Source of the DNA: Ruditapes philippinarum
Lineage: Eukaryota
DNA length: 64,000 nucleotides
NCBI RefSeq assembly: GCF_026571515.1
Contig: NW_026866451.1
Coordinates: 310,001-374,000, forward strand
Direction: 5' to 3'
Shown: positions 38,858 to 63,415 of the stretch, piece after piece
How the letters are laid out: each line of letters begins with the position of its first letter
Position numbering within the stretch: position 1 is the stretch's first letter
Notes under the pieces: generated by a model
What the model saw: only the letters and a program-made list of their open reading frames with translations
Databases searched by the model: none
What the model was told of the DNA's origin: nothing
Translations under genes and position numbers: made by a program

Positions 38858-40640
38858 TTTTTAGCTCACCTTGCCAACAAAGTGCAGGTGAGCTTTTAGG
38901 ATGGCCAACCAAATGGCGTCCCGTCGTCTGTCGTCCGTCCACATTTTAAATATTCTAAGGACATCTTCTATGCATATGATACTGCAAGGCCAATGTTAAT
39001 GAAACTTGCGAGGAATACTCTTTGTATGAAAGCTCTATCAAGATTGTTCAAAGCAATTCCATTTCATGCAGAACTCTGTTTGCCATGGCAACCGAAAGAA
39101 AAAATCTTTTGCATATCTTCTTTTAAAGAACCGTAAGAGCTAGAGCTTAGATATTTGGCATGAAACATCTTCTAATGCAGTGTCTACCAAGTTTGTTCAA
39201 ATAAAAGCCCTAGGATCAAAAATTTGCCCCCGCCCCAGAGGGGTCATTGATTTTCCCTATATGCATTATAGTAAAACTTAAAAAATCTTCTTTTAAAGAA
39301 CCCAAAGAGCTAGAGCTTAGATATTTTTGCATGAAACATCTTCAGGTGCAAGTGTCTACCAAGTTTGTTCAAATAAAAGCCCTGGGGTCAAAAATGGCCC
39401 CCATGACCCCAGGGCGGTCATTGATTTCCCTATATGCATATAGTAAAAACTTAAAAAAAATCTTCTTTTTAAAGAACTGTAAAAGCTAGAGCTTAGATAT
39501 TTGGCATGAAACATCTTCTAGTGAATGTCTACCAAGTTTGTTCAAATAAAAGCCCTGAGGTCAAAATTGGCCCTTGCCCCAGGGGGTCATAGAGTTTCCC
39601 TATATGCATATGAGTAAAAAAACTTTAAAAATCTTCTTTTAAAAAGAACCCAAGAGCTTAGAGCTAAGATATTTGACATGAAATATCTTCTAGTGAATGT
39701 CTACCAAGTTTTGTTCAAATAAAAGCCCTTGGGTCAAAAAATTGGCCCCGTCCCAGGGTGTCATAGATTTTCCCTATATGCATATAGTAAAAACTTAAAA
39801 AATCTTCTTTTAAAGAACTGTAAGAGCTAGAGCTTAGATATTTGGCATGAAACATCTTCTAGTGAATGTCTACCAAGTTTGTTCAAATAAAAGCCCTGGG
39901 GTCAAAATTGGCCCCGTCCCAGGGGGTCATAGATTTTCCCTATATGCATATAGTAAAAAACTTAAAAAATCTTCTCTTTAAAGAACCCAAAGAGCTAGAG
40001 CTAAGATATTTAGCATGAAACATCTTCTAATGAGTGTCTACCAAGTTTGTTCAAATAAAAGCCCTGGGTCAAAATTGGCCCCGCCCCATGGGGGTCATTG
40101 ATTTTCCCTATATGCATGTAGTAAAAACTTAAAAAAAATCTTCTTTTAAAGAACTCAAAGAGCTAGAGCTAAGATATTCAGCATGAAACATGTTTCTAAT
40201 GGGTGTCTACCAAGTATGTTTCAAATAAAAGCCCTGGGGTCAAAACTGGCCCGCCCCGGGGGTCATTGATTTTCCTTATATGTGTATAGCAAAAACTTAA
40301 AAATCTTCTATGAAAAAACCCAAAATAGCTTGAGTTTAGATATTATACATGAAACATCTTTAAGAAAATATCTACAAAAGTTTGTTCAAATAAAAGCCCG
40401 GGGGTCAAAACTGGCCCCGGCCCCAGGGGTGTCATTGTTTTTAACTATATGTGTATAGTAAAAACTTAAAAAATCTTCTTTTAAAAAACCCAATGAGCTA
40501 GAACTTAGATGTTTAGCATGAAACATCTTCTTATGGGTGTCTACCAAGTCTGTTCAAATAAAAACCCTTGGGTAAAAATTGGCCCGGGGGGGGGGCTATA
40601 TACAGGTGAGCGACCTCAGGGCCATCATGGCCCTCTTGTT
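38858..40640 (+). mobile_element. Non-autonomous Helentron-type element (HINE/DINE-like) with ~9 internal ~169-bp tandem repeats
   Basis: 5' TTTTAGCTCACC...CAGGTGAGCT inverted repeat, then a GTCC/GTCT microsatellite. The AGAGCTAGAGCTTAGATATTT unit recurs from ~39136 to ~40493. The 3' end has CAGGTGAGCG and the palindrome AGGGCCATCATGGCCCT. Inserted in a T run. Confidence 0.85.
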
Positions 40641-48018: not shown

Positions 48019-48235
48019 ACGGCTTCGTGAACATTTGATAACTTACGAAGACGAGGTTAAAAGACATGCGAGTCAGAAAAGCAAGTTTAAGAATGTTGAC
48101 CTTCGCCTTTGTAGACTCTGCTTCAAAACCAAGTTTGCTGACGGTATCGGGAAAGCTTGCTCCGACTGTCACAAACGTGTTTGTAATAAATGCGGCTCCT
48201 TCTCACAATCAACATGGAGTGCAAAGAAAAATAAG
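48019..48235 (+). CDS. RIMS-like: RIM/Fife-family exon: zinc finger part 1 (FYVE-related Cys8)
   Basis: tttcag|A CGG...AATAAG|gtaaat. Translates RLREHLITYEDEVKRHASQKSKFKNVDLRLCRLCFKTKFADGIGKACSDCHKRVCNKCGSFSQSTWSAKKNK. CxxCxKTKFADGxGxxCxxC is the RIM zinc-finger signature. Phase 2 in, phase 0 out. Confidence 0.95.
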
Positions 48236-49068: not shown

Positions 49069-49227
49069 ATAGTGAAAGGTAAATGGCGATGTAACATGTG
49101 TCAGATGAAGAGAGATGTCGTAGCTAAAACAGGTGTCTGGTATCATGGAGATGACGGACCTGTTATACCATCTCAGAAGTTCAAAACCAAACTGAGCATC
49201 TCTGAAATTGACTCTTCTGAAAATGAC
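49069..49227 (+). CDS. RIMS-like: RIM/Fife-family exon: zinc finger part 2 plus SGAWF-like motif
   Basis: tttag|ATA...AATGAC|gtaata. Translates IVKGKWRCNMCQMKRDVVAKTGVWYHGDDGPVIPSQKFKTKLSISEIDSSEND. WxCxxC completes the finger and TGVWY corresponds to the SGAWF(Y) motif. 159 nt, phase 0/0. Confidence 0.9.
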
Positions 49228-49294
49228 GTAATAACTTACACTTTCATTTTTTTAACATGGCTGACACTGTTTCTTTGTTATCGTCGAATTCTTT

Positions 49295-49297
49295 TTT

Positions 49298-49349
<52 letters not shown>

Positions 49350-52593: not shown

Positions 52594-53640
52594 ACTTCGA
52601 AGTGGGAGTATGTCTGAATGGAGTTCTTGTAGTAAAGACGGATACACGGACAATGAGAAAACGAAAGATGTATCCGGAAGTGACGTCGTCGCACAAGAAA
52701 ACAGTTCCACGGATTATTATCAATCTACGGACCAAGATCGTTATTCTCACAGCGACAGATCACCTGATGTTAAAGCAAAAAGTTATCGTTCTTCAAAACG
52801 AACACCATCAATTATGAGTCTTGAGGAAAATGTGCGCCATCGTGAAGATGGTGCAACAAGACATTCGAGTCGTTCACTTTTCCGACAGAAACATTCTTTA
52901 GATTATATGTGTGATCCAAGAAGTGCAAGTCACGAAGAACAAAGCCCAAGTAGATTAGATAGACGAGATGGTGCTTCAAACAGTGAATCAAAACCTGCTT
53001 CTAGAAATAATAGTGTCGAATCAATTAGACACAGACGTCAGAAGCATTCCGCATTACGTCACCAACAATCAAATGACAACATGCCAATCATCGAAATTTC
53101 AAAAAATCAAACTGATGATGTGCCTTCTATAAATAGCTCAAAGGAAAATCTTCATAAAAGGAATAAATCCAGTGGATTTTATTTAGACAACAGTCATTCA
53201 AGCGAAAGGGAGCAATATGCTTCAGGATATCCATGTGAACCTCGCATATCACGTGACTCAGTTTCTTCTCAAGATTCTAATTTATACCGAGAATCTCGTT
53301 TCTCACGAGAATCGTGTACGTCATATGACTCTATCGACATGTCACCGGTACCTATTGCTGGAACAGCGAGGCGAAAGCTAGAGAGACAGAATGAGACATG
53401 TTATAGCAGTTCATCAAGTATTTTCTCTGACAATAAACCATATCATACGAATGAAACGGCTCAATTTGAGTTCTCTGATGTATCTCCGTCCAAAGTTGAA
53501 AGTGTTCAGGATGAAATAGAAAGACAAAAGTTTGCTCAAAAGTTACCACGGAATATGAAGAAAGGGCTCACTGCCAACAGGCTTTCATCAAATAGTCTTT
53601 CTCCTGATATGGCCTTACACAGAAGTCATCGAGAAAAAAG
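52594..53640 (+). CDS. RIMS-like: RIM/Fife-family large low-complexity Ser/Arg/Asp-rich linker exon
   Basis: ttttctaag|A CTT CGA...GAAAAAAG|gtaata. 1047 nt, phase 2/2. Contains the 344-aa ORF 52610..53644 of the ORF track. Confidence 0.9.
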
Positions 53641-53714
53641 GTAATAATTTGAATTATTTCTTTATACTTTTAGTATTTCGCATTCCTCTTTAATTTTTTC
53701 ATTTTCGCCTAAAA

Positions 53715-56800: not shown

Positions 56801-57699
56801 TTAATTGAATCTTTCTTGAATAAACTTCTCGGTGTGTTGGATCTATCTCGAGCTGACGTCGTAGCTTGAATCCACGACATCTGGGTTGCTAAATGAAAAA
56901 CGTATACAAATGTTTTTTTATCACCAAGGGGCTCTTTGGCATGACTTGTGGTCGTCAATTTATAATACCGACTAAGATACATTCAATGTCCATCAATGAC
57001 TTTGTACATCACAGCAGATCCTTTCCTATTTTTTTATTTTGCTAGTCCCCAGATCACCTACATAACGTTAATATAGACATACTAGTAATACAAAGCTTGT
57101 TTTAAACATGAATTTAGTATATTGCGAGAAAAAAAATTGCCGAAAAAACATTTAACGGTAAATGTTGTGACAATTAACGTAACGGAAACTGATCGGCATT
57201 TTAACGGCCCCATCATTGCGACTTTGAACGGCCAATATAGCGGCCCAAAAAGAGGTTTGCGACATTTTTGGGGGTTGTTGCCCGGGCCCAGAATGGGAGT
57301 TTTTTAACGTTTGTGAAAAGGCTAGGGGTAAAGGTTTTTTTCAAAACCCAAAAATAGTTTGGAAAAAATTTATCTTAACTTTAAATCCCTTTACCCCTTT
57401 TAAAACATTTTCCAAAATTAAAAATGGGTAGTAAATTTTTGTTTATTTTTATTTTTTTAAATTTCGATGTTGTTGGGTTATTTTTAATGCACATGTACAT
57501 ATCAGTATTTCACAATTTACATTTAATAATCTATAAGCAAAACAAGTTATTTTATGCATGTTGTAATGATAACAATACCCAACATTTAGCAGTAAAAAGT
57601 AAACATCAGATAAGTAACAAATTTTACAATCATACTCAATCCTCGCAAACGTGTCTGACTGTATTAAGAAATTTATACGACACGATTGTCCAATGAAAT

Positions 57700-57872
57700 T
57701 CGACGTTAAAAACGTGTAAAGCGGGAGTTTAATCGTCGGACTAGTAATTCTCTAGTCGCGTGGGTTCAAAACCCGCCAGGTGCAGGCCGTGGCTTCCTTG
57801 AACAAGACATTATACATTTATTGCTCAGTACTGGTTGGTTCCAGGAACGGATTCGAACATGTGTCTCAATCG
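57700..57872 (+). mobile_element. SINE family A, intronic
   Basis: GGGTTCAAAACCCG...TTCCTTGAACAAGACA...TGCTCAGTACTGGTTGGTTCCAGGAACGGATTCG. Confidence 0.8.
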
Positions 57873-58225
57873 AACTTAAATAACTTGTTGTATGTATAAA
57901 CTAATCTTACAGTAATATGAGAAGTCGTGAATATATTCTATCCACCAAATTTTGGCCAAGTATAAATTTAGGCGTTGTGCAAAACGTTGGCAGTATACAG
58001 ATCTGATGAACATTTGTATGATATTTACGTTATAACCTAATGATATCAATGGAAAAAAAGTTAGCCCCAAAATTTAAAATCCCCTTTATTCCCAAAACCC
58101 TTTAAAAAATCTTCCAAAATTCCTTAATCACCCCTTAAAACTAGCTTTTAATATATTTAAAAATTGCGTTTTATTTTTTAAAAGGGCCCGTATGTTAAAG
58201 GGGATCTCCCCTCCTTTTTTTACAG

Positions 58226-59092: not shown

Positions 59093-59167
59093 GACAATCG
59101 AGTCATTCTCCGTCAAGTTCACACCAAATTATCATTCATCGAAATAAGCGAGATCACTCCATAAGAA
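59093..59167 (+). CDS. RIMS-like: RIM/Fife-family exon: start of PDZ domain
   Basis: ttacag|GA CAA...AGA A|gtaagt. Translates QSSHSPSSSHQIIIHRNKRDHSIR. Phase 1/1; the other two frames contain stops. Confidence 0.8.
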
Positions 59168-59419
59168 GTAAGTATATGCTTGTGTGGGTAAAAATAACAT
59201 TACACATACACGTACAACTTAATGTTTCAATCAATTATATTTGATTGATTATTTCATTATATTAATTACTAATGATTTTAATACTTTATCATCTATTCTG
59301 ACATATCCAGATATCGGTGGTTCAAATGAGTTCATTTTACATGATTTAAATAGTTTATAAGACACATGACTTTTAAAATATCAAGATGTGTAACTGTTCC
59401 AATTCAATTTGTTCATCAA

Positions 59420-59810
59420 AACTTACCATGAACTTTTGACACCATTTTAACCATCTCAACTATCTTACACTTACTTTTTGACACCTAATTTCATTATTTT
59501 TGACACCTGCATTGTAGTTCCATTATAAACTTTTTGATACTTAGTTCCATGATGAACTTTTTGACAACTTATTCCACTATGAACTATTTGACACCTGGTT
59601 CTATAATGAACTATTTGAGACCTAGTTCTGTATCTAGTCCCGTTATGAACTCATTGGCACGTATATATATTATGAACATTGAAAACCTAGTTCATTCATG
59701 AACTTTTCGACTTATGGTTGCATTCACTAAATTCCATTGTTAACTTTTTAACACCTGGTTTCATTATAAACTTTTTGATACCTAGTTTTTATTATGAACT
59801 TTTAGCTATT
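59420..59810 (+). repeat. Degenerate ~31-32-bp tandem repeat
   Basis: Recurring TGAACTTTTTGACACCTAGTTCCATTA-like unit. Confidence 0.8.
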
Positions 59811-59977: not shown

Positions 59978-60094
59978 CGCAAGGTTTAGGAATGCGCGTT
60001 GTCGGAGGAAAACGAGCGTCTAATGGTCGTCTGTGTGCTTACGTCACTATGGTGTCAAAAGAAGGTCCGGCAGATAGGCAGGGTATAGCCGAAG
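59978..60094 (+). CDS. RIMS-like: RIM/Fife-family exon: PDZ domain core
   Basis: tatttag|CG CAA...GAA G|gtattg. Translates TQGLGMRVVGGKRASNGRLCAYVTMVSKEGPADRQGIAE. LG(M/L/I)(R/K)VVGGK...GRLCA is typical of RIM/Piccolo PDZ domains. Confidence 0.95.
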
Positions 60095-60454: not shown

Positions 60455-60575
60455 GTGACCAAGTGTTGGAATGGAACGGCAGATCGTTACTCGATGTTAC
60501 ATTTGAAGAGGCTCAAGAAATTATCAACCAGTCAGGAAGCATTGTTCAGCTTTCTATAATTCATGGGGCTCTGAA
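60455..60575 (+). CDS. RIMS-like: RIM/Fife-family exon: PDZ C-terminal half
   Basis: ttttatgaag|GT GAC...CTG AA|gtaagt. Translates GDQVLEWNGRSLLDVTFEEAQEIINQSGSIVQLSIIHGAL. GDxVLEWNG...TFEE is a RIM/Piccolo PDZ hallmark. Phase 1 in, phase 2 out. Confidence 0.95.
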
Positions 60576-61410
60576 GTAAGTTTGTCCTCCAACATTCTGT
60601 AGTTCATGGAGCTCTGAAGTAAGTTTGTCGCTCCAGATTTCTATAATTCATGGGGCTCTGAAGTAAGTTTGTCGCTCCAGATTTCTATAATTCATGGGGC
60701 TCTGAAGTAAGTTTCTCGCTCCAAGATTTCTATAATTCATGGGACTCTGAAGTAAGTTTGTCGCTCCAACTTTCTGTAGTTCATGGGACTCTAATGTAAG
60801 TTTCTCTCACCAGATTTCTTTAATTCATGGGGCTCTGAAGTAAGTTTGTCGCTCCAACATTCTGTAGTTCATGGGGCTCTGAAGTAAGTTTCTCTCTCCA
60901 GATTTCAATAATTAATGGGGCTCTGAAGTAAGTTTCTCTCTCCAGATTTCTATAGTTCATGGGGCTCTGAAGTAAGTTTCTCTCTCCAGATTTCTATAAT
61001 TCATGGGGCTCTGAAGTAAGTTTCTCGCTCCTACTTCCTGTAGTTCATGGGGCTCTGAAGTAAGTTTCTCGCTCCTACTTTCTGTAGTTCATGGGGCTCT
61101 GAAGTCAGTTTCTCGCTCCAGCTTTCAATAATTCATGGGGCTCTGAAGTAAGTTTCTCGCTCCAGATTTCTATAATTCATGGGGCTCTGAAGTAAGTTTC
61201 TCGCTCCAGATTTCTATAAGTCACGGGGCTCTGTAGTAAGTTTCTCGCTCCAGATTTCAATAATTCATGGGGCTCTAAAGTTAGTTTCTCGCTCCAAATT
61301 TCTGTAATTCAAGGGGCTCTGAAGTAAGTTTCTCGCTCCAGATTTCTGTAATTCAATGGGCTTTTAAATAAGTATGTCCCTCCAGCTTTCAATAATTCAC
61401 GGGGCTCTGT
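60549..61410 (+). repeat. 44-bp minisatellite (~19-20 copies) spanning the PDZ exon/intron boundary
   Basis: Unit ATTTCTATAATTCATGGGGCTCTGAA|GTAAGTTTCTCGCTCCAG. Donor GT positions run 60576, 60619, 60663, 60707, 60752, 60796 and then every 44 nt to 61324. Confidence 0.97.
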
Positions 61411-61588
61411 AATATATAATATAATTCTCGCTTAAGTTTCTGTACTTCTAGAACAGAGTGATTTTTCGACATTGTAATGAAAAAATGGAATATATGGATC
61501 TATCAGTAATAATATTATCATTCATTCCAATATTGTACAACAGATATAATATTATATAATTCTTCAATCAACTAATTTGTGTTTTCAG

Positions 61589-61641
61589 AAGTGGTAGTAA
61601 CCAAAGTTTGAGAAGAAATCATCCCATAATTATTAAATCCG
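61589..61641 (+). CDS. RIMS-like: RIM/Fife-family short linker exon after PDZ
   Basis: gttttcag|A AGT...TCC G|gtatgt. Translates SGSNQSLRRNHPIIIKS. Phase 2 in, phase 1 out, fitting both neighbours. Confidence 0.75.
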
Positions 61642-61804
61642 GTATGTGCAAACATGATACATGTATATTTATCTAGGCATCTTATTGTGGATGTTTCAGT
61701 TTTAATCACTCGTAACTAATCCTGAAAAGAAGAATCCGTGAAACAAAAATGATTTTATATTTTTTCTTATAATTTTCTCGACTGATTGCAATAAATTTAA
61801 TAAT

Positions 61805-63415
61805 TAGGCCCATTAGTTTTAGAATGGCTTTTTTTTCTCAAAAGCTTTTATTTTGGGTACATTTTTATTGTGTCGCCTTGAAAAGGCGACATATAGGTGT
61901 TACTTTTGTCGGCGGTGTCGGCGGCGTCTGTGTCGGCGGCGTCGGCGTCGTTGTCGGCGTCGTTGTCGGCGTCCCCTAAAGCTTGTCCGGAACATAACTC
62001 AGTCACTATAAGACTGATTGACTTCAAACTTGGTATGCATGCTTCTTTCAATAATCCGAAGTGCAGTGCACAAGGACCGGTACTCTGCAGTTCTTAATTT
62101 TTGAGTTATTGCCCTTTGTTAATTTTCATACTTTAATTTTGTCCGGGCCATTTCTCTTCAACTAAAAAAGCTATGGACTTGAAACTGAATAGGATGATAG
62201 ATCTCATTAAGAAGAAGTGCAGTGCACAAGAACCGGTACTCTGCACTTCCTAATTTTTGAGTTATTGCCCTTTGTTAATTTTCATACTTCATTTTTGTCC
62301 GGGCCATTTTTCCTAATGTATAAAAGCCATGAACTTGAAACTTCATAGGATGATAGATCTCATTAAGAAGAAGTGCAGTGCACAAGAATTGGTACTTTGC
62401 ATTTCTTTTTTTTTTGAGTTATTGCCCTTTGTTTATTTTCATACTTTAATTTTGTCCGGGCTATATCTCCTGAAGTATAAAAGCTATGGACTTGAAACTT
62501 CATAGGATGATAGATCTCATTAAGAAGAAGTGCAGTGCACAAGAATCGGTACTCTGCATTTCTTATTTTTTGAGTTATGGCCCTTTGTTAATTTTCATAT
62601 TTAATTTTTGTCTAGGCCATTTCTCCGAAAGTATAAAAGTTATGGACTTGAAACTTCATAGGATGATAGATCTCATTAAGAAAAAGTGCAGTGCATAAGA
62701 ACTGATACTCTGCATTTCTTATTTTTTGAGTTATTGCCCTTTGTTGATTTTCTTACTTTATTTTTGTCCTGGTCATTTCTCCTCAAGTATGAAAGCTATG
62801 GACTAGGATGATAGATCTCATTAAGAAAAAGTGCAGTGTACAAGAACCGGTACTCTGCACTTCTTATTTGTGAGTGATTACCCTTTATTAATTTTCATAC
62901 TTTATTTTTGTCCAGGCTATTTCTCATAAATTATAAAAGATATGGACTTGAAACATCATAGAATGATAGATCTTATTGATAAGAAGTGCAGTGCACAGAA
63001 ACTGCTGCTCTGCACTTATTAATTTATTAGTTATTGCCCTTTGTTATTTTTCATATTTCATTTTTGTCCTGGCCATTTCTCCTAAACTATATTGTTCACA
63101 AGGCGACACATCCGACTCGCGGAGTTCTAGTTGTTTTCATAAAATTACTCATTGGCCAATTACCTGAACTGTTTTTTGTCGTCTGCTTCTTTTTTGGCAA
63201 TTTGTACCACAGTTATAGTGACTGTATTTTGTATGGAAGTCATAGTACTACTTTGTTTACATTTCACTACTTTTTGGTACATTTTATTTTACATTTATCG
63301 CTACTTTCTTCAGTTAACAAGCAATTAACTTAGCTCTAAAATTATAATTTAAACTTTTAGAAAAAAATCATGTTTGCCCATTCTAAAGAATAAAAAAAAT
63401 TTCTGAGGCCTAATG
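61805..63415. mobile_element. Degenerate copy of the 4373-4712 MITE, interrupted by the HINE at 61862-63136
   Basis: Left part AGGCCCATTA...TCAAAAGCTTTT and right part CTCATTGGCCAATTACCTGAACT...TGTTTGCC...TTTCTGAGGCCTAAT match the two halves of the 4373 element. Confidence 0.6.
61862..63136 (+). mobile_element. Second HINE-type element with ~7 internal ~156-bp tandem repeats
   Basis: 5' TGTCGCCTTGAAAAGGCGACA hairpin, a (GTCGGC)n microsatellite, the AAGTGCAGTGCACAAGA unit from ~62058 to ~62985, and 3' CAAGGCGACACA. Flanks are T-rich. Confidence 0.82.

What the first reader, a model, noticed from the sequence alone, without database searches (positions are those of the whole stretch)
60549..61410. 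Splice-donor minisatellite: ~19-20 tandem copies of a PDZ exon end plus its 5' splice site
Seen in the sequence: the 44-bp unit is the last 26 coding nt of the PDZ exon followed by GTAAGT and the first intron bases, so most copies reproduce the authentic GAA|GTAAGT donor. Many units also end in a pyrimidine tract plus CAG (TTTCTCGCTCCAG), giving acceptor|26 nt|donor cassettes. Use of any downstream donor reads CTG AAG TAA, a stop just after the PDZ. Inclusion of a typical 26-nt cassette reads AAA TTT CTA TAA, also a stop. Only the first donor yields full-length protein. Inference: the array could be a copy-number-tunable dial for donor competition, U1 loading, NMD or a truncated ZnF-PDZ isoform of a synaptic scaffold. 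It also resembles an intermediate of exon/intron gain by tandem duplication. It may equally be a neutral VNTR.
Basis: partly seen in the sequence, partly recalled or inferred. Interest (0 to 1): 0.8.

Follow-up and report, generated by a model that had tools for sequence, protein, structure and literature searches.

The report
Splice-donor minisatellite in clam RIM gene
An intron of a mollusc's RIM synaptic-scaffold gene starts with about 20 tandem copies of the preceding exon's end and its splice donor, but this kind of repeat is already known ("mirage", or F7-type boundary minisatellite) and the assembled mRNAs use only the first, real donor.

Summary
A 44-bp unit is repeated 19.6 times at 60547-61409. 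Each unit holds the last 26 coding bases of the second PDZ exon of a RIM-like gene, then GTAAGT, then 12 intron bases. Thirteen downstream copies carry the same nine-base donor, GAA|GTAAGT, as the real one. The array occurs nowhere else in the 1.41-Gb genome.

Those contigs hold no array sequence beyond the exon end.

No test pointed to a function. The decoy donors are not conserved more than the rest of the unit, and RNA folding does not set the first donor apart.

This design is already described. Examples are human F7, IFI6, CBS, LMNB2 and PDGFA, and the amphioxus "mirages". In most of these only the most upstream donor is used. Earlier notes of this scan report many such arrays in this same genome.

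The best reading is a tolerated, probably length-variable intronic minisatellite. Low-level use of decoy donors followed by mRNA decay is not excluded. Interest is low.

The parts
48056..48235 (+). RIM-type zinc-finger coding stretch (exon limits not mapped)
   Evidence: Pfam PF22601 RIM2a_ZnF, E 1.4e-10, 41.3 bits against a cut-off of 27
49072..49230 (+). Second part of the FYVE-type zinc finger (exon limits not mapped)
   Evidence: Pfam FYVE_2 profile positions 93-115, E 0.0012, below the cut-off; ORF
52610..53644 (+). Large serine-rich coding exon (given as ORF limits)
   Evidence: 344-aa ORF; relatives at 77%, 56%, 48% and 54% identity in other assemblies; no Pfam family
59093..59167 (+). 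Small coding exon whose donor has the same 9-mer, GAAGTAAGT
   Evidence: RNA contigs X15 and X17, joint 59167>59978 GT..AG; sequence; 9-mer
59978..60094 (+). First PDZ exon
   Evidence: RNA joints 59167>59978 and 60090>60451 (cut +4, so 60094>60455); Pfam PDZ profile positions 10-46
60455..60575 (+). Second PDZ exon; its last 26 nt (60550-60575) are the exon-derived part of repeat unit 1
   Evidence: RNA joints; Pfam PDZ positions 45-80 of 81, E 7e-5; best solved-structure matches are the RIM2 and RIM1 PDZ domains
60576..60581 (+). Real 5' splice site GTAAGT (GAA|GTAAGT), the only donor seen in assembled RNA
   Evidence: Joint 60575>61589 GT..AG in X15 (side 53) and X17 (side 36)
60547..61409 (+). 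44-bp x 19.6 minisatellite; units 2-18 are decoy donors, 13 of them with the exact GAAGTAAGT, and 12 units end in CCAG
   Evidence: unique in the genome
61410..61450 (+). Decayed remnant of one more unit (TTCTCGCT...TTTCTGTA) after an AT-rich insertion
   Evidence: Read directly from the sequence; unit 20
61589..61641 (+). Next coding exon, 53 nt, opened by the acceptor ttttcag|
   Evidence: RNA joint 60575>61589 with 53 nt on the right side in X15; the frame stays open through this exon

Best explanation
This is a boundary-spanning ('mirage', F7-type) minisatellite. A 44-bp segment straddling the junction of the second PDZ exon and its intron, in a mollusc RIM gene, was duplicated in tandem. 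Slippage or unequal exchange then expanded it to about 20 copies, all lying on the intron side.

The splicing machinery pairs the first donor after the exon with the acceptor at 61589, so the whole array is removed as part of a 1,013-nt intron. The decoys have the same intrinsic strength as the real donor but are not used productively. Extra copies therefore cost little, and the array persists as a tolerated, probably length-variable repeat.

Shown here: the anatomy, the local origin, the canonical junction in RNA, and the stop codons in every alternative. Inferred: first-donor preference as the mechanism (by analogy with the F7 experiments), neutrality, and length variation.
For: - **Array and register:**
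- **Gene identity:** RIM zinc finger plus a split PDZ domain; the best solved relatives of the PDZ exon are RIM2 and RIM1.
- **Local origin:** the unit is absent from the rest of the 1.41-Gb genome.
- **Canonical junction:** RNA contigs of two separate studies (X15, X17) show 60575>61589.
- **Array absent from RNA contigs:** their depth in bin 60550-60718 is what the 26 exon bases alone would give, and it is zero from 60719 to 61563, while the flanking exons stand at 5.6-6.9.
- **No constraint on decoys:** 5 of 9 donor columns vary, against 21 of 35 other columns.
- **Ordinary repeat turnover:** the edge units are the most divergent, and the 5' units share the TTGTC variant of the original junction.
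- **No structural masking:** array MFE z = +1.9 against shuffles; predicted accessibility of the first donor is 0.053, against 0.002-0.08 for the decoys.
- **Literature:** the same design in F7, LMNB2 and PDGFA uses only the most upstream donor, IFI6 and CBS use the first three, and F7 mutagenesis shows that the first functional donor wins (PMC1557585). Amphioxus mirages do not disturb splicing (PMC3087553; PMC3902484).
Against: - Contigs drop rare variants, so decoy use below roughly a third of the canonical form would not have been assembled.
- Products carrying early stops may be removed by nonsense-mediated decay before they can be seen.
- The one raw RNA run (X24) had depth of only about 1-2 on exons and a similar depth on introns and the array. 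It gave no junction reads at all, so it does not bear on minor isoforms.
- The donor is strong (perfect GTAAGT) and the intron is short. In some two-site test systems the donor nearer the acceptor is preferred (conflicting results are discussed in PMC1557585).
- Neutrality and length variation were not tested.
Confidence: 0.78

Rival explanations
1. The decoy donors, or the 26-nt and 16-nt cassettes, are used at an appreciable rate. The products carry an early stop and are either degraded or translated into a truncated ZnF-PDZ RIM. Array length would then set the share of productive RIM mRNA.
For: Thirteen decoys are identical to the real 9-mer, and 12 units supply a pyrimidine tract plus CAG. 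All alternatives stop early, so they would be hard to see at steady state. In IFI6 and CBS the two nearest pseudo-sites are used (PMC1557585). X17's main contig breaks at 60562, where the repeated sequence begins; this could reflect a branch in the assembly graph, or simply the repeated words.
Against: No such junction is listed in any run, and RNA contigs of two studies hold no array sequence. In F7, identical pseudo-sites are silent unless the sites upstream of them are destroyed. The decoy donors show no sign of constraint.
Confidence: 0.14
2. The array acts as a landing pad for U1 snRNP. This could protect the long RIM transcript from premature cleavage and polyadenylation, or alter the speed or retention of the pre-mRNA, without the decoys being spliced.
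For: Seventeen GT-bearing U1-type sites lie within 750 nt. RIM genes are long (established knowledge). This is inference only.
Against: The donor positions are not preserved more than the other positions. Earlier notes of this scan report the same kind of array in many unrelated genes of this genome, built from acceptors as well as donors (unchecked). That pattern argues for a mutational by-product, not a U1-specific device.
Confidence: 0.04
3. The array is an assembly artefact, or its length is wrong.
For: Independent DNA contigs (X1) cover only parts of the array, with no depth at 60719-61056. Short-read contigs collapse such repeats.
Against: The units are diverged (87% matches) and show an ordered pattern of variants along the array, which assemblers do not invent. 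Array sequence appears in X1 DNA contigs (61057-61225, depth 4.8) and in raw reads of a separate 2026 RNA run (X24, several array bins).
Confidence: 0.03

Closest known systems
Human F7 intron 7 minisatellite (37 bp, 5-9 repeats; Borensztajn et al. 2006, PMC1557585)
   Same: The first monomer spans the exon-intron boundary, so the real donor is followed by identical pseudo-donors. Only the most upstream donor is used.
   Different: The F7 unit holds only 4 exon bases and a weak donor (UGG|gugggu), and has fewer copies. Here the unit holds 26 exon bases, the donor is a perfect GTAAGT, there are about 20 copies, and most units also carry an acceptor-like CAG. First-donor preference is shown by mutagenesis for F7 and is only inferred here.
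Human IFI6 (6-16) and CBS boundary minisatellites (as summarised in PMC1557585)
   Same: They reiterate the splice donor (25 pseudo-sites in IFI6; 15-20 repeats in CBS).
   Different: In those genes the two nearest pseudo-sites are used constitutively. Here no pseudo-site use was seen, and any such use would end the protein right after the PDZ domain.
Amphioxus 'mirage' minisatellites (Adh3, TnC, globins, PGBD5; PMC3087553, PMC3902484)
   Same: Tandem duplications of an exon-intron boundary in an invertebrate. Regular splicing is undisturbed, the edge units are excluded from homogenisation, and they have been proposed as raw material for intron gain.
   Different: A different phylum (mollusc) and a different gene. 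Length variation and somatic instability are documented in amphioxus but were not tested here.
Intron gain by tandem duplication across an AGGT site (Rogers' model; PMC3265369, PMC4974935)
   Same: A duplication creates extra donor and acceptor pairs.
   Different: In those cases the duplicated segment becomes a spliced intron inside a former exon and the frame is restored. Here the copies lie in an existing intron, and no new exon or intron is in use.

Membership tests
Boundary-spanning ('mirage' / F7-type) minisatellite | Head-to-tail repeat with a minisatellite-sized unit | tested here: met
   44 bp x 19.6 copies, 87% matches
Boundary-spanning ('mirage' / F7-type) minisatellite | The first monomer contains a real exon-intron junction | tested here: met
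   Unit 1 is 60550-60592. The junction 60575|60576 is used in RNA contigs of two studies (register)
Boundary-spanning ('mirage' / F7-type) minisatellite | The splice-site sequence is reiterated inside the intron | tested here: met
   17 further GT-bearing copies, 13 of them with the exact GAAGTAAGT
Boundary-spanning ('mirage' / F7-type) minisatellite | The unit derives from the local junction, not from a dispersed repeat family | tested here: met
   Only a self-match in the 1.41-Gb genome; 16 of 16 pattern hits lie inside the array
Boundary-spanning ('mirage' / F7-type) minisatellite | Normal splicing is kept: the real or most upstream site is used | tested here: met
   Only 60575>61589 appears in X15 and X17, with zero contig depth inside the array. 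Minor use below the assembly threshold is not excluded
Boundary-spanning ('mirage' / F7-type) minisatellite | Copy number varies between individuals | not testable with these tools
   The assembly holds no second haplotype copy.
RIM (Rab3-interacting molecule) family | N-terminal RIM-type zinc finger | tested here: met
   PF22601, E 1.4e-10, above the cut-off
RIM (Rab3-interacting molecule) family | Central PDZ domain of RIM type | tested here: met
   PDZ split over two exons. The best solved matches to the second exon are RIM2 1wfg (E 1.3e-4), then a KIAA0559 chain 1ujd (E 5.7e-4), then RIM1 1zub (E 7.6e-4) and RIM1 2css (E 1.3e-3)
RIM (Rab3-interacting molecule) family | C-terminal C2A and C2B domains | not tested
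   They would lie beyond the end of the window

The most novel reading that the evidence does not exclude
In this short-intron invertebrate the identical strong decoy donors do compete. A sizeable share of RIM pre-mRNA is then spliced from downstream copies, or includes 26-nt cassettes, and is removed by nonsense-mediated decay. Array length would become a heritable dial of presynaptic RIM dosage, or the source of a ZnF-PDZ-only isoform.
Probability: 0.08. Interest if true: 0.6.

Novelty: new member of a known kind. Interest (0 to 1): 0.2.

Why it matters
On its own this adds one more example, in a mollusc synaptic gene, of a repeat type known from human disease genes and from amphioxus.

Its practical value is as a natural test case. 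Fourteen identical strong donors stand in a row, and any donor but the first ends the protein. That makes a clean substrate for asking whether the first-donor-wins rule shown for human F7 also holds in an invertebrate with short introns.

The wider point rests on unchecked earlier notes of this scan: this genome appears to carry many such junction-derived arrays. A genome-wide count against a geometric expectation would be more informative than any single locus. Gene annotators should also expect mis-called donors at such arrays.

Tried and rejected
- **Dispersed satellite or transposon origin:** rejected. The unit is found nowhere else in the genome.
- **Second haplotype or paralogue for comparing array length:** none in the assembly. 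The single weak 85-bp hit on another contig is unrelated.
- **Selective preservation of decoy donors:** no signal.
- **RNA structure hiding the decoys or exposing the first donor:** no signal. Array MFE z = +1.9, and accessibilities are similar.
- **Isoform survey through predicted proteins:** the 344-aa exon found only four genomic ORFs of other species, at 48-77% identity. The 42-aa PDZ exon found no candidate. Given the tool's length limits, neither blank says anything about absence.
- **Comparison of this intron across species:** no eukaryotic relative's genome could be reached, and the relatives' contigs (1.2-3 kb) do not extend to the PDZ exons.
- **Raw RNA reads (X24):** too shallow, and intron depth was about equal to exon depth, so they say nothing about minor junctions.
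- **Joined spliced model:** only walked codons across exon coordinates and printed the positions of stops.

Full report
**What is there.** Tandem Repeats Finder reports one array at 60547-61409 with period 44, 19.6 copies, 87% matches, no indels and score 1227. Put in register with the exon, each unit is 26 nt matching the exon end (consensus ATTTCTATAATTCATGGGGCTCTGAA), then GTAAGT, then 12 nt (TTTCTCGCTCCAG-type).
- Units 1-18 keep GT at the donor position, and 16 keep GTAAGT. Unit 13 has GTCAGT and unit 17 has GTTAGT.
- Fourteen units, the real one included, carry the exact 9-mer GAAGTAAGT.
- Twelve units end in CCAG.
- A decayed further unit follows at about 61410-61450.

**The gene.** The window holds a RIM-type zinc finger (PF22601, E 1.4e-10), the end of a FYVE-type finger, and a 344-aa serine-rich exon. 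It also holds a PDZ domain split over two exons, matching profile positions 10-46 and 45-80 of 81. The second PDZ exon matches RIM2 best among solved structures; a KIAA0559 chain comes second and two RIM1 PDZ chains follow. This is a RIM (Rab3-interacting molecule) gene. The GC content is about 31% and the genome is 1.41 Gb. Earlier scan notes call the organism a clam; I did not check that. Exons were searched separately, and I built no joined protein for any search.

**Exon structure from RNA.** Contigs of two runs from different studies (X15, X17) behave as RNA, with zero depth in the introns. They give these joints (sequence):
- 59167>59978
- 60090>60451, read with the cut 4 places to the right, so 60094>60455
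- 60575>61589, GT..AG

The exons are therefore 59093-59167, 59978-60094, 60455-60575 and 61589-61641.

**Are the decoys used?** In X15 and X17, the contig depth in bin 60550-60718 (0.90 and 1.39) is what the last 26 exon bases alone would give at contig depths of 5.6-6.9. From 60719 to 61563 the depth is zero. No assembled transcript therefore carries array sequence, and no junction from a downstream donor is listed.

There are limits to this. Contigs drop rare variants, and products with early stops may be degraded. The raw RNA run X24 had depth of only about 1-2 on exons and much the same on introns, which suggests unspliced RNA or DNA, and it gave no junction reads. Minor use of the decoys stays open. 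Read laying allowed one call, so this could not be taken further.

**Consequences of alternative choices.** Walking the codons over exon coordinates gives:
- The canonical path stays open through 61641.
- Every downstream donor stops at TAA 60577 (...HGALK*).
- Every 26-nt cassette stops 7 nt into the cassette.
- The three 16-nt cassettes that use a TAG acceptor stop at TAG 61595.

**Origin.** The array matches only itself in the genome. All 16 hits to a 34-nt unit pattern at up to 3 mismatches lie inside it, and the reversed control gives none. It therefore arose by local tandem duplication of the junction, not from a dispersed element. The 5' units share the TTGTC variant of the original junction, the 3' units share TTCTC, and the edge units are the most divergent. 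This is the usual picture of repeat turnover, with the edges excluded from homogenisation. No second haplotype or paralogue exists in the assembly.

**Tests for function.**
- Donor columns vary as often as the others: 5 of 9 against 21 of 35.
- The array folds less stably than shuffled sequence (z = +1.9).
- Predicted accessibility of the first donor is 0.053, within the decoys' range of 0.002-0.08.

Nothing marks the decoys as preserved or masked.

**What is known.** Borensztajn et al. 2006 (PMC1557585) describe this same design. In human F7 a 37-bp repeat of variable copy number has its first monomer spanning the exon 7 / intron 7 boundary. The pseudo-donors are identical and functional but silent, and the most upstream functional donor always wins. 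The paper lists further cases:
- IFI6: 25 pseudo-sites, of which the first two are used
- CBS: 15-20 repeats, with two pseudo-sites used
- LMNB2 and PDGFA: only the real site is used

In amphioxus such arrays are called "mirages". They do not disturb splicing, they vary in length, and they have been proposed as a route to intron gain (PMC3087553; PMC3902484). Intron gain by tandem duplication is documented separately (PMC3265369 and PMC4974935).

Earlier notes of this scan list many such arrays in this same genome, built from donors and from acceptors. One follow-up judged the link to exon edges to be only about twice what geometry predicts. These notes are unchecked and I treat them as leads only. 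I found the F7 paper before reading them; the term "mirage" came from them.

**Verdict.** The locus is a new member of a known kind of repeat. The most likely mechanism is first-donor selection, which leaves the copies inert and tolerated (confidence about 0.78). A dosage dial that works through unproductive splicing remains possible, at about 0.1, but nothing found here supports it. Within this window, 8 arrays and about 18 exon edges in 64 kb give roughly 0.1-0.2 boundary-spanning arrays by chance (my estimate). One such array is therefore not surprising.

Noticed in passing
window 7000-34000: A macrosatellite of about five tandem units of 5.1-6.5 kb, 60-97% identical, lies upstream of the RIM zinc-finger exon. 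It is seen as 20 repeat families with matching spacings and as recurring ORFs.
   Followed up: partly
window 39115-40585 and 62058-63091: Two satellite arrays, 168 bp x 8.7 and 156 bp x 6.7. The second shows higher-order periods of 313 and 469 bp.
   Followed up: no
window 57677-58014 and 61733-62050: Very high-copy dispersed repeats, with word depth in the thousands to tens of thousands in DNA and RNA runs alike. Stretch 61906-61973 is a GC-rich CGGTGTCGG-type microrepeat with many length variants.
   Followed up: no
window 59515-59803: A 27-bp minisatellite in two blocks (4.2 and 2.5 copies) lies in the intron before the first PDZ exon.
   Followed up: no
window 59165-59173: The donor of the small exon 59093-59167 has the same 9-mer, GAAGTAAGT, as the amplified donor, but has not been amplified.
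   Followed up: no
window 49289-49349: A (TTCT)15 microsatellite lies directly after the second zinc-finger coding stretch.
   Followed up: no
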